NCBI GenBank assembly: GCA_013239625.1
Contig: MU056243.1
Span: forward strand, 3,856,225 to 3,920,224
DNA: 64,000 nucleotides
Source of the DNA: Lama guanicoe
Taxonomy: Eukaryota
Direction: 5' to 3'
The stretch's first letter is position 1. Every line of letters starts with the position of its first letter. Both the position numbers and the translations under genes were made by a program. The notes under the pieces are model-generated. The model worked only from the letters and a program-made list of their open reading frames with translations. It searched no databases and was not told the DNA's origin. Of this stretch, positions 6,032 through 61,096 are shown piece by piece.

Positions 6032-6164
6032 TTTTTTTTTGGGGGGAGGGGGAAGTAATCGGGTTTACTCGTATCTTTTTATTTTTAGAGGATACTGGGG
6101 ATTGAACCCACGACCTCGTGCATGCTAAGCATGCACTCTACCACTTGAGCTCTATCCTCTCCCC
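6032..6164 (-). mobile_element. tRNA-derived SINE (vic-1-like)
   Basis: Reverse complement of the same A/B box family. Confidence 0.85.
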
Positions 6165-12183: not shown

Positions 12184-12310
12184 TTTTTGGAGGGGTGGAG
12201 GAAGGGTAATTAGGTTCGTTTATTCATTTTTAATGGAGGTGCTGGGGATGGAACCCAGGACCTCGTGCACACTAGGCACGTGCTCCACCACTGAGCTGTA
12301 CCCTTCCCCC
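12184..12310 (-). mobile_element. tRNA-derived SINE (vic-1-like)
   Basis: Reverse-complement A/B boxes. Confidence 0.85.
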
Positions 12311-17749: not shown

Positions 17750-17912
17750 AGGAGGGAGGTTATAGCTCAGGCAGTAAGAGTGCATGCTTAGCATGCATAA
17801 GGTCCTGGGTTCAATCCCCAGCACCTCCTCTAAAAATAAATAAGTAAATAAACCTAATTACCTACCTCTGCCAAGAATAAAAAAGAATTTTTTTTTAAAA
17901 GAAAAAAAAAAA
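17750..17912 (+). mobile_element. tRNA-derived SINE (vic-1-like)
   Basis: A/B boxes and an A-rich tail. Confidence 0.85.
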
Positions 17913-18972: not shown

Positions 18973-19993
18973 CTAAAAATAATAAGAAGAAGAATTACGA
19001 TTAATAATAAGTGGCCCTGGTGCCACTGGTTCTAAGTAGAATACCTTGGAAAGAAATGAAAATTGTATGTGAGTGGAATCCTGGTAATTAAAGAAAATCT
19101 GGATTCAGACAGTCACTTATGTGCTTAACTAAATTATAACGTTTAGTTCTTTTAAAAGCAGGGCTGGTTAACTGTTCTGCCAATAACTCTGAATGCCTCG
19201 CACACGTTAGAATAGCTGGAAACACACTTAGGACTACCCTGTGATGTCGATATTTGAAAATAAAACAGTGTTTTCCACGGACTAGTGGTGCACCCTTTGC
19301 ATATATACATTTACACCAGGAACTTAAAAAATACTCAGGTACTATTTATATATAATTCTCCTAATTAAAGTGAAGGATAAGAGTTTTGCTTTCCAATTCA
19401 CAAAGGAATCAATCTTCTGAGTCTGGCAAAGCACTTCACTTTGTATTTCTAATCAAGGAAAACAGAGGAACCCCTACTGCTGCCTAGAATAATTCCTTTG
19501 CTGTCCTGCTGAAGGTACAATGACAATGTAAATAAACATCTGGAAAGCATTTCTCTTTCACGTAAGTAGCATTCAATTACATAGAGCTGGTGTTACTCAA
19601 ACACGGAAAGTGACCAGTTTGAAAATGAGAAAAAAAAAAAGTAACATCTTTGCTCTAAGAAACAGAATAACATAATACGTTAACAAACGTTTAAAAGGCA
19701 TTTCTCATCTATTTGTCTGTAAATAAGCTGCTCGAAAGGTCCATTACCAAATAAAGTCAAAGATAACGAAGAGAAGAGAGAAGATCTCATCTTTGAGTAC
19801 TGCTCTGAAAATAGATTTTCCTAATTTAATACAGACTTTAACTTGGATAAACTTAGATATTAGGTCAGCTTATTAAACTGAAAATGGAAAACACTGCTGG
19901 CAGGCTTACCAGCCATCACATCATTCTCTGTGATGCTTTTCTGTTAGACTTATATTCAAAACGTAAGTTCAAAAATGAAATTAAAGGCACTGA

Positions 19994-20103
19994 GATAGAC
20001 TGGGATTTCAAAATTGTAGAATAGATAAACAAGATTATACTGTATAGCACAGGGAAATATATACAAGATCTTATGGTAGGTCACAGAGAAAGGAATGTGA
20101 CAA

Positions 20104-20137
<34 letters not shown>

Positions 20138-20227
20138 CATGTATAATTGAAAAATTGTGCTCTACGCTGGAATTTGACATAACATTGTAAAATGATTATA
20201 ATCAATAAAAAATGTTAAAAAAAAATA
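19994..20227 (+). mobile_element. 5'-truncated L1 3' end with TSD taaaggcactga and internal (TA)n
   Basis: L1-type 3'UTR, AATAAA, A tail and TSD. Confidence 0.8.
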
Positions 20228-20489
20228 AAGGCACTGAACTTCAAATAAAAACTGACAAAGGAAGGCCAAAGACTGGCAGAAAGTTGGCATGAGATAATGG
20301 TAAAAGAGCAAGTATTTATTTGTTAATTTTCAACCCCTACCCCACCCCCACCCAGTCATTTTAGCTGCATCAATTCATTCAGACCTCAGGCCATTTGCTT
20401 GTAACACTGGTTATTGTTAGTGTACCAGAAGCTTCCTCTCCCCAAGTGTCAATCACATTTTTCACATTCACATTTCAAATATAACTTAC

Positions 20490-31135: not shown

Positions 31136-31270
31136 GAGGAGGGTGTAGCTCAAGCAGCAGAGTGCATGCTTGGTATGCATGAGGTCCTGGGTTCAATTTC
31201 CAGTGCCTCCTCTAAAAATAAGTCAACCTAATTACTTCCCCGCCCCTGCCAAAATAAAATAAATAATACA
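31136..31270 (+). mobile_element. tRNA-derived SINE (vic-1-like)
   Basis: A/B boxes and an A-rich tail. Confidence 0.85.
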
Positions 31271-35236: not shown

Positions 35237-35329
35237 CTTCAGGNNNNNNNNNNNNNNNNNNNNNNNNNNNNNNNNNNNNNNNNNNNNNNNNNNNNNNNNN
35301 NNNNNNNNNNNNNNNNNNNNNNNNNNNNN
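35237..35329 (-). CDS. PPFIBP1: PPFIBP1 coding exon 7, 93-nt cassette (...SLK), mostly hidden in an N gap; 5' end inferred
   Basis: Only C CTG AAG|gtgtag is visible at the gap edge, matching the end of recalled human SLMAKLSSMKIKVGQMQYEKQRMEQKWESLK. Confidence 0.6.
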
Positions 35330-35398
35330 NNNNNNNNNNNNNNNNNNNNNNNNNNNNNNNNNNNNNNNNNNNNNNNNNNNNNNNNNNNNNNNNNNNNN
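35244..35398. other. Assembly gap, 155 N
   Basis: N run. Confidence 1.
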
Positions 35399-37254: not shown

Positions 37255-39680
37255 TTCAAAATTCAAGTTCGAGGGAAAAGTTTCTCCCATTTATTTAGCT
37301 CCCATTTATTATCCATCCTTGTGTGTGTTCTTAGTAATCTTTCTTCATCAATTTGGTCTTTCTTATATATATTTCCACTTTCTTGTTAAGAAACAGCTTT
37401 GAATTCCTATTTGGATTACTCTATTTTACCACTTTCTTTAGAAATAGTGGCAATTTGCAAAGAAGAAACAATTGAAGAAAACAGAATTATAAATTGGTGT
37501 CATTTTCCTATTAAAAAAAAACTATCCAGTTATTCTTTGTGGCAACACTATAAATACGAACGTAAATTTATAATCTGAAAGAAGTCCTATCTTCTTATGA
37601 TAACTCAAGTTGGAAAGTCTAGAAGTAGCTCCTTAGTATGAAACTTCTAAAAATGGAATACAAATTATTTCCAACTACTTTCTCATCTGAAGTTCAGTAC
37701 TTTTTAAAAAGAAAATCCCCGTTACCTTTCCCTATTCCCTTTCAGAGAATGCTTCAGGGCTCAACAGAACTCAGTTTCTGATACCTGTGCTCTCACCAGA
37801 AGGGGGCACTGTTGATCGATGCTAACCACCCACCAGCAACTCCTGGGACAGGCAAGCCCTCAGTCTTCCAAGGTTTTAAGACTTCTACCCCCATCTTTTA
37901 GAAGTGCCTTTACTTCTTCCCCAATCCAATGTTTTCTTAGAAATTAATCTCCAAATAATCTACAGTTCTGAGACAAAGTTAAAAGAATTCTGGCTTTACG
38001 AAACAGTCAGAGAAACATTTCAATTAAGGGGGAAAAATAGGAAAATGAGCATTTCAACTTTAATTTTTTTTTTTTAGTTTCAACTTTGAAGAATACTTTA
38101 ATTCTTTTTACTTATAATAAAGTTTATCAAATATCCTATAATCTCTGAGTATGTGCATATTATATTTTACCAATGGTATTGAGTTATTTATTAGAAAATT
38201 ATCAGGGATTGAGTTAACTAGAAGTTGGATGACAAGATCACCTTGCATATGACTGAGTGGATGCACAAGTGAAGCAAGGAAGCACCAAAAAAAGGTTTTA
38301 CAAAAAATGCAGATAAACTTGAGAGATGCATATACTGCTCTGGGGTCTTAACAGAAAAAAAAAATCATAAAACATCGACTTCAATTTAGTCCCAGCGTTT
38401 GGTTAACATCTCGTATCCAAATTAACCACAGTTGTGCAGGTTACGGCTGTTGCCTAAACTTTGTGTATTTAATGTAGAAGGCCACCTCTTGATCCCCTAA
38501 AACCATAAACTTCTTTTCCAACACCAGCGTTAGCTCCACGGCCATGCTATCCATCTGTTGGCCGAACTCTATTGCTGTGTTATACAGCAACTGTGGAGTC
38601 AGGGAAAGACAGAAAGGGAAAAGAGGAAATATCCAATCCGATTTTTTAAAGAAAGTACAAGAGCAAGAATTTTTAAAAAACTGGGTTAACTTTCTAAGTT
38701 TTATTTTAAGAGCCCCAGTCTCAATCAAATGAGAAACATGCTTATACAGGTCACTGACAGAGACCTTCAAGATTAAAACATGAACCAGGTTGGGGATTTC
38801 CTTTTTGCCGCTGAGGAAGCAACACATATACCACGACTTTCCATTAATAGTTACGTCTTTGACAGAACATTTAATTTGAAAAACAGTGATGCAGGAAACC
38901 TTATTAAAGTCAGCTCTATGAAGGACTTCAACATGATGGACAAGAAATGTATCTCACATCACGACAGCGTGTAGTCGGCATAAAATAAATATTTGAAATA
39001 AATCTAGTATGACGCCTCTCCACGTGCCAGTCAAGGAAAGAAAAAAGAAAAAAGAAGAGATAGCCCTAGGGGAAAACAAAATTCTGCAGCTCTTTGTATT
39101 TCTTTTCAAATGAATCGATTTCCTATGGATATGCTCTGTATCCCCACCAACACCACAAAAAGCAATGAACAAACTAGAAGACCTGGATTAACAATAAAAT
39201 CGGTTGAACAAACAAGAAAGCATGTTTAGCCAGGAAAATGGGTGCTTCAGGTTGAATTTCACAAAAGGATAGTGGGCTGTATTTAACTGGTGTGATTTAC
39301 ATGTGGAATAGACCAAAAGTAGAAGGCCAAATTAAATGACCTCTAAAAACCTGTGATTTTAATATTATACAATAAAAGCATGTTCTCTACACATGGTTTA
39401 AAATCCACCTATTATATAGTAAATAAACAGTATGCCAAAATAAGAACTACTAGTAAAGTCATGCACTTAAACCGATTTATTTCCACAATGAAGAAATCAG
39501 TATGGATGAACAGATGGACAGATGGATGCATGGATGGCTAGACCGACAGACAGAAGCTCCAAAATGTCCTAAAGTCAAAAGTACTTCTAAAGGCTAATGA
39601 AAGGATTAACAGGTGAGTCTTGGCTCAGCCCTGAATGAAGTGCTCTTCGCCCAGCAACACCAGGGACTACCGCATGGAGT

Positions 39681-39895
39681 GCCTACCTGAGCAGAGGGGA
39701 GCCGCTGACCCAAAGGAAGAGAAAGAGGAAATCTCTCTACCTGAGGAAAGGGAGGACATTGACCCAAAGGAAGAGGAAGAAGAAATCTCTCCACCTGAGG
39801 AGAGGGAGGACAATGGCTTAAAGGAAGAGGGAGAGGAAATCTCTGCCTGAGGAAAGGGAAGACACTGCTTTGGAGGAGGAAGAGGAGGAACAGGA
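39681..39895 (+). repeat. 4 x 54-nt coding-type tandem repeat (LPEEREDIDPKEEEEEIS-like)
   Basis: cctgag anchors at 39686, 39740, 39794 and 39846 (spacing 54, 54, 52). Confidence 0.9.
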
Positions 39896-39987
39896 TGAGA
39901 CTTTTGAAATGAAGGATGGAGAAGCCTTATCCTTCAAGCCTAAGGAACAGACAGAGACCTTTGAAGCAGTGGAAGAACTAATAAGCA

Positions 39988-40127
39988 TGTTTCCCCCTCC
40001 AAATGTGGTTCCTCCTCCCAATGCAATTTCCCCTCACTCAGTGTTTCCCCCTCCAACAGAACTCACCCCTCACTCTGTGTTTCCCGCTCCAACAGAACTC
40101 ACCCCTCACTCTGTTTCCCCCTCCAAA
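39988..40127 (+). repeat. 36-nt Pro-rich tandem repeat (VFPPPTELTPHS-like) with degenerate flanking units
   Basis: Near-identical units start at 40041 and 40077, with partial units on either side. Confidence 0.88.
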
Positions 40128-40522
40128 TGAATAAAGAGAGTTTTCAATATTTATTTCCTTAAATTTTGTCTCCTCCTCAAACTTTTACTGTAGGAAGGTA
40201 TCTGTTCTGATATGCTCTCTCTTGCTTTGGCTCCTTGTAGCATTTAATAATTTACATTAAAAGCAAGACTAAATTAAAAAAAAAAGGATTAACATTTCAT
40301 ATCTGACGCCTCAAAAAAAATTGCCATTACCATTTAGTGATTAAAAAGTCAACGTAATTAAAGTTTATCCTTAAAAAGCAGCATGGATAATGAGGGCATA
40401 CAGTAATTAACTGCCTTCCTTCCACACGTCCAGGGAATTTCAGCTTGCTCTAGGAACGTGTGTGAGATAAATACGTATGTATATATGAACATGTGGATAA
40501 AGAGAGAAAGGGTATCACTTAC

Positions 40523-40654
40523 CTCNNNNNNNNNNNNNNNNNNNNNNNNNNNNNNNNNNNNNNNNNNNNNNNNNNNNNNNNNNNNNNNNNNNNNNNNNNN
40601 NNNNNNNNNNNNNNNNNNNNNNNNNNNNNNNNNNNNNNNNNNNNNNNNNNNNNN
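40523..40654 (-). CDS. PPFIBP1: PPFIBP1 coding exon 5 (ELLSRTS...RDTE in human), hidden in an N gap; inferred
   Basis: GAG|gtaagt is visible at the left gap edge and a pyrimidine-rich tract at the right edge. The expected 132-nt exon plus its acceptor fits the 132-N gap. Confidence 0.8.
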
Positions 40655-40657
40655 NNN
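40526..40657. other. Assembly gap, 132 N
   Basis: N run. Confidence 1.
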
Positions 40658-40734
40658 TTAGAATTTAAGAGAGACATTCAAAAGTTGTTTTTATTATAAA
40701 CAGCTACACATGGATGTGTCTCACTTATTTCTTG

Positions 40735-40856
40735 TTTGGGGTGGGGGGAGGTAATAAGGTTTATTTATTTATTTTTAGAGGAGGTACTGGGGATTGAACC
40801 CAGCACCTTGTGTGTGCTAAGCACGTGCTCTACCACTTGAGCTATACCCTCCCCCC
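40735..40856 (-). mobile_element. tRNA-derived SINE (vic-1-like) with flanking duplication tggatgtgtctcactta
   Basis: Reverse-complement A/B boxes; direct repeat at ~40711-40727 and ~40859-40875. Confidence 0.88.
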
Positions 40857-41074
40857 ACTGGATGTGTCTCACTTACGACTTACAAAGCAGTAACTATTAA
40901 GTACAGGATGTGCAGATGAACTACCAAATAGATACATGCTTTAGTTAGCCTTCAACTCAGCCGAACTAATGCTCAATAAACAGCTCATGTCTGCTTACTG
41001 GGGAGACACAGATGGGTCCTCACATATATAAACCTTACGTATTCTTAAGCCTGATGAGAATGCGGAGGATGACA

Positions 41075-50186: not shown

Positions 50187-50315
50187 GGGGGGAGGGTGTA
50201 GCTCAGTGGTAGAGTGTGTGCCTAGCATGCATGAGGTCCTGGGTTCAATCCTCAGTACCTCCTTTAAAGATAAATAAATTTTAAAAATTACTTTCCCCCT
50301 AAAATTAAAAAAAAT
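50187..50315 (+). mobile_element. tRNA-derived SINE (vic-1-like)
   Basis: A/B boxes and an A-rich tail. Confidence 0.85.
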
Positions 50316-60871: not shown

Positions 60872-61096
60872 NNNNNNNNNNNNNNNNNNNNNNNNNNNNN
60901 NNNNNNNNNNNNNNNNNNNNNNNNNNNNNNNNNNNNNNNNNNNNNNNNNNNNNNNNNNNNNNNNNNNNNNNNNNNNNNNNNNNNNNNNNNNNNNNNNNNN
61001 NNNNNNNNNNNNNNNNNNNNNNNNNNNNNNNNNNNNNNNNNNNNNNNNNNNNNNNNNNNNNNNNNNNNNNNNNNNNNNNNNNNNNNNNNNNNNNNN
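60872..61096. other. Assembly gap, 225 N
   Basis: N run. Confidence 1.

What the first reader, a model, noticed from the sequence alone, without database searches (positions are those of the whole stretch)
39600..40294. Intronic retrocopy of an unrecognised Glu-rich/Pro-rich repeat-protein mRNA
Seen: a ~670-nt insert antisense to PPFIBP1, bounded by an exact 12-bp duplication (aaaggattaaca at 39600-39611 and 40283-40294). It ends in ATTAAA, 14 nt and an A10 tail. It holds four 54-nt acidic repeats and 36-nt Pro-rich repeats, both multiples of 3. The fourth acidic unit is 2 nt short. Restoring those bases gives one ~165-aa ORF: MKCSSPSNTRDYRMECLPEQRGAADPKEEKEEIS-[LPEEREDIDPKEEEEEIS]n...MFPPPNVVPPPNAISPHS-[VFPPPTELTPHS]n-VSPSK. 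Established: TSD plus poly(A) marks L1-mediated retroposition of a germline or early-embryo mRNA. Inference: an intact parent gene for a disordered acidic repeat protein exists elsewhere. I do not recognise it; it may be a lineage-specific germline gene family. The perfect TSD suggests a fairly recent insertion.
Basis: partly seen in the sequence, partly recalled or inferred. Interest (0 to 1): 0.85.

Follow-up and report, generated by a model that had tools for sequence, protein, structure and literature searches.

The report
Dead retrocopy of unnamed FPPP-repeat gene
A 671-base processed pseudogene sits backwards in an intron of the liprin-beta-1 gene; it is an ordinary kind of object, but it was copied from the mRNA of a small acidic, proline-repeat gene family found in several mammalian orders, and I found no name or study for that family.

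Summary
An exact 12-bp duplication (39600-39611 and 40283-40294) brackets a 671-nt insert. The insert ends in ATTAAA, 14 nt and an A-run. It holds four 54-nt acidic units and 36-nt Pro-rich units. A 2-nt loss at about 39843 splits an ORF of about 165 codons.

Three corrections:
- The last 3 of the 10 A's belong to the duplication.
- A second 2-nt gap at about 40113 changes the C-terminus.
- The conserved start is probably Met14 (ATG at 39674).

It is an L1-type processed retrocopy, antisense to the minus-strand host gene, and it is broken.

The source is not lineage-specific. Both ORF pieces are colinear with a pig-cluster ORF (65-68% identity). Relatives exist in pig, deer, yak and rabbit, plus unnamed ORFs of unknown species. 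All are "uncharacterized" or carry chance names such as WDR44-like and CPSF7-like. There is no Pfam, PDB or paper match. The family shares an acidic N-half, a conserved core and 3-6 FPPP motifs spaced 12 residues apart, and it is predicted to be disordered.

RNA runs labelled "reproductive system" hold 37-51% of the insert's words. I could not show whether they come from a parent gene.

Not done: finding a camelid parent, counting copies, finding an empty site, a Dfam check.

The parts
39600..39611 (+). 5' copy of the target-site duplication AAAGGATTAACA. It is preceded by TG, so the target reads TG|AAAG.
39612..40282 (+). Retroposed insert (671 nt): leader, broken ORF, 3'UTR and A tail.
   Evidence: GC is 46% against 36-42% in the flanks. 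There is no second copy in the window.
39612..39673 (+). Probable 5' leader. It contains an ATG at 39635, directly preceded by an in-frame TGA. Read in another frame (39613-39690), it matches the part of the deer gene model just upstream of the conserved ME start.
39674..39850 (+). ORF piece 1, from the conserved start (Met14, sequence MECLPEQR) to the premature TGA created by the first frameshift.
   Evidence: 68% identity to residues 1-56 of P0016, a member of a pig-containing cluster.
39683..39896 (+). Four 54-nt (18-codon) acidic units.
39843..39845 (+). Frameshift 1: one CT lost from a TCTCTCT run at the junction of units 3 and 4.
39840..40130 (+). ORF piece 2 in the shifted frame: the last acidic unit, the conserved core (DGEALSFKPKEQ ... 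ELISMFPPP), the FPPP units and the stop.
39993..40131 (+). 36-nt (12-codon) Pro-rich units.
40113..40114 (+). Frameshift 2: one TG lost from CTCTGTG in the last Pro-rich unit. The ungapped frame ends VFPPPNE-TAA (stop at 40132-40134).
40131..40275 (+). 3'UTR. It is homologous to the read-through tails of the pig ORFs P0014 and P0016. An unused AATAAA lies at 40130-40135.
40256..40261 (+). Poly(A) signal ATTAAA, 14 nt before the A-run.
40276..40282 (+). A tail. The A-run continues to 40285, into the duplication.
40283..40294 (+). 3' copy of the target-site duplication.

Best explanation
This is a processed pseudogene. An mRNA of roughly 0.65 kb, or the last 0.65 kb of a longer one, was reverse-transcribed by the L1 machinery at a nick in TG|AAAG. 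It was inserted into an intron of the minus-strand liprin-beta-1 (PPFIBP1) gene, in the opposite orientation, and the insertion duplicated 12 bp of target.

The copy has no evident promoter of its own, though no eukaryotic promoter scan was run. It carries two 2-nt slippage deletions in dinucleotide runs that break the reading frame, so it is most likely inert.

The source mRNA belongs to a small, fast-evolving family present in several mammalian orders. I found no name for it. The family encodes proteins of about 130-210 residues that are predicted to be disordered. They have an acidic N-terminal half (18-residue units in the camelid, pig and ruminant members), a conserved core (DGxEALSFxPKEQ ... 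EEPISMFPPP) and 3-6 FPPP motifs at strict 12-residue spacing.

Shown: the anatomy of the insert, the strand of the host gene, colinear homology of both ORF pieces to the family, and the absence of any named relative.

Inferred:
- L1 was the agent.
- The source was expressed in the germline or early embryo.
- A parent gene exists elsewhere in this genome.
- The parent protein works as a flexible poly-proline ligand in reproductive tissue. This last point is a low-confidence guess.
For: - Duplication, signal, tail and repeat units. Chance expectation of the duplication is 1.8e-4 per kb.
- A 5'-truncated L1 3' end elsewhere in the window has the same kind of 12-bp duplication.
- Host exons on the minus strand flank the site.
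- Piece 2 finds 7 proteins among 1.84 billion. The best is a pig-cluster ORF with E 7e-19 and 62% identity.
- Pieces 1 and 2 align colinearly to P0016 with E 4e-17 and 7e-21.
- Names given by sources: pig A0A8D1HV33 'uncharacterized', yak L8ITC1 'hypothetical', deer XP_020747212.2 'WDR44-like', rabbit XP_069934501/2 'CPSF7-like'.
- No Pfam family and no PDB relative. The Atlas model of the pig homologue has pLDDT 0.45 and pTM 0.16.
- FPPP periodicity of 12 residues holds across the family.
- RNA runs labelled 'reproductive system', from two studies, hold 0.37-0.51 of the words.
Against: - No parent copy in this genome was seen, no copy count was made and no empty site was found.
- No Dfam or Repbase check was possible.
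- The RNA signal could come from intronic pre-mRNA of the host gene.
- The protein collection does not contain even this copy's own ORFs, so its silence about a camelid parent means nothing.
- Coding status of the family is not proven. The ORFs are low in complexity. The C-terminal ends differ by frame among the pig-cluster variants. Codon-position counts within the repeats show no third-position excess.
Confidence: 0.85

Rival explanations
1. It is one copy of a multi-copy retroposon that depends on L1 for its spread (a described or undescribed interspersed repeat). It is not a one-off copy of a cellular gene's mRNA.
For: Several distinct variants sit in each of the pig and ruminant clusters, and they differ by frameshifts at the C-terminus. 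Contigs carrying the ORFs are 1-2.3 kb, longer than the insert.
Against: - Only about 20 protein clusters exist among 15 billion proteins. A high-copy element would give many more.
- There is one copy in 64 kb.
- It has no tRNA, 7SL or 5S head.
- The same reading frame is kept across orders.
Confidence: 0.07
2. The copy is not inert. It is transcribed, in reproductive tissue, as a retrogene or non-coding RNA, possibly making the 71-aa and 73- to 86-aa products separately.
For: RNA runs hold 37-51% of its words. Its poly(A) signal is intact.
Against: The frame is broken twice. No upstream promoter was identified. It lies antisense inside an intron, where pre-mRNA reads or reads from a near-identical parent explain the same signal.
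Confidence: 0.07
3. The repeat pair is a chance match, or the frameshifts are assembly artefacts.
For: None, beyond the general risk of dinucleotide-run errors in assemblies.
Against: The duplication is expected 1.8e-4 times per kb. It sits exactly at an A-run that lies 14 nt after ATTAAA. The whole insert is homologous to mRNA-like ORFs of other species.
Confidence: 0.01

Closest known systems
L1-mediated processed pseudogenes (retrocopies) of mammalian mRNAs
   Same: Target-site duplication of 7-20 bp that starts with A's, a poly(A) signal and tail, an intronic location, no evident promoter of its own, and frame decay.
   Different: The source mRNA matches no named gene. The tail is short (7-10 A). 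Loss of introns cannot be shown because no parent gene is in hand.
Predicted proteins: pig A0A8D1HV33 (its cluster also holds P0009, P0014, P0015; P0016 is in a sister cluster), deer XP_020747212.2, yak L8ITC1 (M91_15046), rabbit XP_069934501/2
   Same: Colinear acidic units, the same conserved core and FPPP units. The leader and 3'UTR are also homologous. Identity to the window's pieces is 42-69%.
   Different: They are intact ORFs. The number of units, the N-terminal extensions and the C-terminal frames differ. Their '-like' names come from low-complexity resemblance, and no Pfam domain of WDR44 or CPSF7 is present.
FPPPP repeats of ActA, zyxin and lamellipodin, which bind Ena/VASP EVH1 domains
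   Same: Several F-P-P-P motifs in a disordered, acidic setting.
   Different: The fifth residue is T, N, S or D, not P. None of 35 family sequences fits the class I EVH1 pattern as I recall it from ELM. The strict 12-residue spacing is not a feature of those proteins.

Membership tests
L1-mediated processed pseudogene | Direct target-site duplication flanking the insert | tested here: met
   12/12 bp at 39600-39611 and 40283-40294. Chance expectation is 1.8e-4 per kb.
L1-mediated processed pseudogene | 3' A tail preceded by a poly(A) signal at 10-30 nt | tested here: met
   ATTAAA at 40256-40261, then 14 nt, then an A-run at 40276-40285. The tail is only 7-10 A.
L1-mediated processed pseudogene | Target resembles the L1 endonuclease site TT|AAAA | tested here: inconclusive
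   The site reads TG|AAAG, which is 4 of 6. This is within the known looseness of the site, but it is not diagnostic.
L1-mediated processed pseudogene | Colinear with a spliced mRNA of a gene elsewhere (introns absent) | not testable with these tools
Colinearity with homologous ORFs of other species is shown.
Described interspersed repeat (SINE, LINE, LTR or DNA element) | Match to a Dfam or Repbase consensus, with many dispersed copies | not testable with these tools
   No repeat library was available. Indirect evidence: a single copy in the window, no small-RNA head and few protein clusters.
Class I EVH1 ligands (FPPPP type) | Motif [FYWL]PxPP or [FYWL]PP[ALIVTFY]P. The pattern is recalled from ELM, not fetched. 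| tested here: not met
   0 matches in 35 family sequences and in both window pieces.
WDR44 / CPSF7 (names carried by the deer and rabbit models) | WD40 repeats, or the RRM and other domains of CPSF7 | tested here: not met
   No Pfam family at E up to 1 in P0017, P0025 or P0014. The rabbit model itself was not scanned.

The most novel reading that the evidence does not exclude
The source is a real protein-coding gene family, present in several mammalian orders, that has escaped naming. It would encode small disordered proteins with an acidic half and FPPP motifs at exact 12-residue spacing. It would evolve fast, vary in unit number and be expressed in reproductive tissue. The FPPP array would serve as a multivalent ligand for an unidentified proline-recognition partner.
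Probability: 0.35. Interest if true: 0.5.

Novelty: new member of a known kind. Interest (0 to 1): 0.3.

Why it matters
The retrocopy itself is one of thousands in any mammalian genome and has no evident effect on its host gene.

Its value is as a pointer to the source family. In every record I could see, that family is 'uncharacterized', 'hypothetical' or named by a chance low-complexity match. It has no Pfam family, no solved structure and no paper that my searches could find.

If the family is coding and specific to reproductive tissue, it would be a compact case of a fast-evolving repeat protein with a very regular short-motif array. It would be worth an expression survey and a binding-partner screen.

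The deer and rabbit names (WDR44-like, CPSF7-like) look like annotation errors worth flagging.

Tried and rejected
- Pfam on both pieces and on four relatives: nothing.
- Rfam on 39000-41000: only a tRNA-like SINE outside the insert, plus sub-threshold noise.
- ESM Atlas: no usable hit, and TM below 0.3 for the pig model.
- PDB profile search: no hit.
- Three word-based protein searches and one exhaustive HMMER search: only the small unnamed family.
- Two JGI metagenome scans, one with the family alignment and one with P0023: patterns matched, but no confirmed relative.
- Paper searches for family peptides and for FPPP / testis / repeats: nothing relevant.
- The scan's own notes by sequence and by words: nothing on a parent copy.
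Local whole-window scans did pass over them.
- Codon-position counts in the repeat units gave no coding signal either way.
- EVH1, Homer (PP..F) and WW (PPxY) patterns are not conserved in the family.
- I took no contig for human. No contigs of relatives were fetched at all.

Full report
**What is in the sequence**

AAAGGATTAACA stands at 39600-39611 and again at 40283-40294. These are its only two occurrences in the window, and neither copy can be extended on either side. From base composition this 12-mer is expected 1.8e-4 times per kb.

Between the two copies lie 671 nt with 46% GC. The flanks have 36-42% GC. The insert ends with ATTAAA (40256-40261), 14 nt, and an A-run at 40276-40285. The last three A's of that run are also the first three letters of the duplication, so the tail proper is 7-10 A.

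Inside the insert are four 54-nt units starting at 39683, 39737, 39791 and 39843. The spacings are 54, 54 and 52. There are also 36-nt units across 39993-40131, with the last spacing 34. No second copy of the insert exists in the window.

**Reading frames**

An ATG at 39635, directly preceded by an in-frame TGA, opens a 71-codon frame that stops at 39848-39850. The frame continues in another phase from 39840 to the TGA at 40128-40130.

The first break is the loss of one CT from a TCTCTCT run at the junction of units 3 and 4.

One TG is lost from CTCTGTG at about 40113 in the last Pro-rich unit. In the ungapped frame the end reads VFPPPNE followed by TAA. These are the same eight residues that pig and ruminant relatives carry at that place. 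The printed frame reads VSPSK-stop. So either the copy or the camelid lineage carries two slippage deletions.

**Host gene and mode of insertion**

Translating the minus strand gives exon-sized open stretches at about 42.9, 41.8, 35.7 and 30.3 kb. They contain peptides that I recall from liprin-beta-1, such as LARLENDKESL, VSVLTDQVEAQGEKIRDLE, EINDLRL and LQYEKKLKSTK. The gene name rests on my memory. The strand is shown by the sequence. The insert therefore lies in an intron and is antisense to the host.

The target reads TG|AAAG, a loose form of the L1 endonuclease site. A 5'-truncated L1 3' end at about 19994-20225 carries the same kind of 12-bp duplication. L1-type insertions with this signature therefore occur elsewhere in this region. 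Together these features make a processed retrocopy the best reading by a wide margin.

**What was copied**

Neither ORF piece matches any Pfam family.

An exhaustive HMMER search with piece 2 against 1.84 billion representatives found only seven proteins. The best was P0009, with E 7e-19 and 62% identity. Word-based searches with piece 2 and with two family alignments added about a dozen more clusters.

The names that sources give to these proteins are:
- pig A0A8D1HV33: 'uncharacterized protein';
- yak L8ITC1 / M91_15046: 'hypothetical protein';
- deer XP_020747212.2: 'WD repeat-containing protein 44-like';
- rabbit XP_069934501/2: 'cleavage and polyadenylation specificity factor subunit 7-like'.

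The rest are unnamed ORFs from Logan, ENA and JGI contigs, and I could not learn their species. The two '-like' names are not backed by any Pfam domain in the deer model or the other relatives scanned (the rabbit model itself was not scanned). I take them for low-complexity naming accidents.

Both window pieces align colinearly to P0016, a member of a pig-containing cluster:
- piece 1 residues 14-70 align to P0016 residues 1-56, with 68% identity and E 4e-17;
- piece 2 aligns to P0016 residues 38-106, with 65% identity and E 7e-21.

So the conserved start is the second Met (MECLPEQR, ATG at 39674), and 39612-39673 is probably leader. The leader itself is conserved. Read in another frame (39613-39690), it matches the deer model just upstream of its ME. 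The 3'UTR is conserved as well. The read-through tails of the pig ORFs P0014 and P0016 match two frames of 40131-40200.

**The family**

Alignments show three parts:
- an acidic N-half, built of 18-residue units in the camelid, pig and ruminant members;
- a conserved core, DGxEALSFxPKEQ ... EEPISMFPPP;
- 3-6 FPPP motifs, spaced 12 residues apart in nearly every member.

Non-artiodactyl members also share a C-terminal Cys/Ser/Phe-rich end.

The Atlas model of the pig protein has pLDDT 0.45 and pTM 0.16, which indicates disorder. No solved structure is related. The FPPP motifs do not fit the class I EVH1 pattern, the Homer pattern or the WW pattern. The patterns were recalled from ELM, so this is a lead rather than a formal test.

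Whether the family is truly coding is not settled.
- For coding: the same frame is kept across artiodactyls, rabbit and other, unidentified sources. Unit lengths are multiples of three.
- Against, or neutral: the composition is low in complexity, and other frames on both strands are open too. C-terminal frames differ among the pig-cluster variants. There is no third-position excess within the units.

**Expression**

Of 24 runs listed for the insert, DNA runs of six organism labels hold 0.71-0.81 of its sampled words. RNA-Seq runs labelled 'reproductive system metagenome', from two studies, hold 0.37-0.51.

A share near one half fits a parent mRNA about 2% different, patchy coverage of this copy, or host pre-mRNA. 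I therefore treat reproductive-tissue expression as consistent with the data, not shown.

**Age**

A perfect 12-bp duplication is not strong evidence of youth. At 3% divergence, all 24 bases stay unchanged about half the time. Two frameshifts, a short tail and 4 CpG against 36 expected suggest that the copy is not very young. A CpG-poor parent would also explain the last figure. No number can be given without the parent.

**Verdict**

The retrocopy reading is supported. 'Lineage-specific' is not supported, because the family spans at least artiodactyls and a lagomorph. 'Unrecognised' holds in the sense that no characterised relative, domain, structure or paper turned up. This is weaker than a proof of novelty, because no mammalian genome, transcript or repeat library could be searched here.

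The object itself is ordinary. The source family is a modest lead.

**Limits**

- Both metagenome scans were blank.
- The protein collection lacks even this copy's own ORFs, so its silence on a camelid parent is uninformative.
- The N blocks at 35244-35398, 40526-40657 and 60872-61096 were left as they are.

Noticed in passing
window 19982-20237: A 5'-truncated L1 3' end (about 19994-20225, ending in AATAAAAAATGTTAAAAAAAAA). It is flanked by an exact 12-bp duplication, TAAAGGCACTGA, and has an internal (TA)n run at about 20110-20135.
   Followed up: partly
window 6086-6160(-), 12234-12307(-), 17755-17830(+), 31139-31212(+), 40778-40851(-), 50191-50264(+): Six tRNA-Ala/Thr-like hits from ARAGORN. 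The one at 40779-40851 also scores 42.6 bits against Rfam tRNA. They are most likely heads of tRNA-derived SINE copies rather than tRNA genes.
   Followed up: no
window about 42904-42884, 41798-41751, 35744-35679, 30340-30323 (all minus strand): Exon-sized open stretches that encode coiled-coil peptides I recall from liprin-beta-1 (PPFIBP1). They fix the host gene on the minus strand and place the insert in the intron between the exons at 41.8 kb and 35.7 kb.
   Followed up: partly
window 40130-40135: A canonical AATAAA overlaps the stop codon of the retrocopy's ORF but was not the site used. The source gene may have a proximal and a distal poly(A) site.
   Followed up: no
window 39502-39537: A short (GATG/GACA)n microsatellite about 70 nt upstream of the insertion site.
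   Followed up: no
window 35244-35398, 40526-40657, 60872-61096: Three N blocks. One lies about 230 nt downstream of the insert.
   Followed up: no
proteins P0017 (deer XP_020747212.2), P0025 (yak L8ITC1), P0013/P0020 (rabbit XP_069934502/1): These public gene models of the family carry long N-terminal extensions with no domain, or '-like' names that no domain supports. They are probably annotation artefacts.
   Followed up: partly
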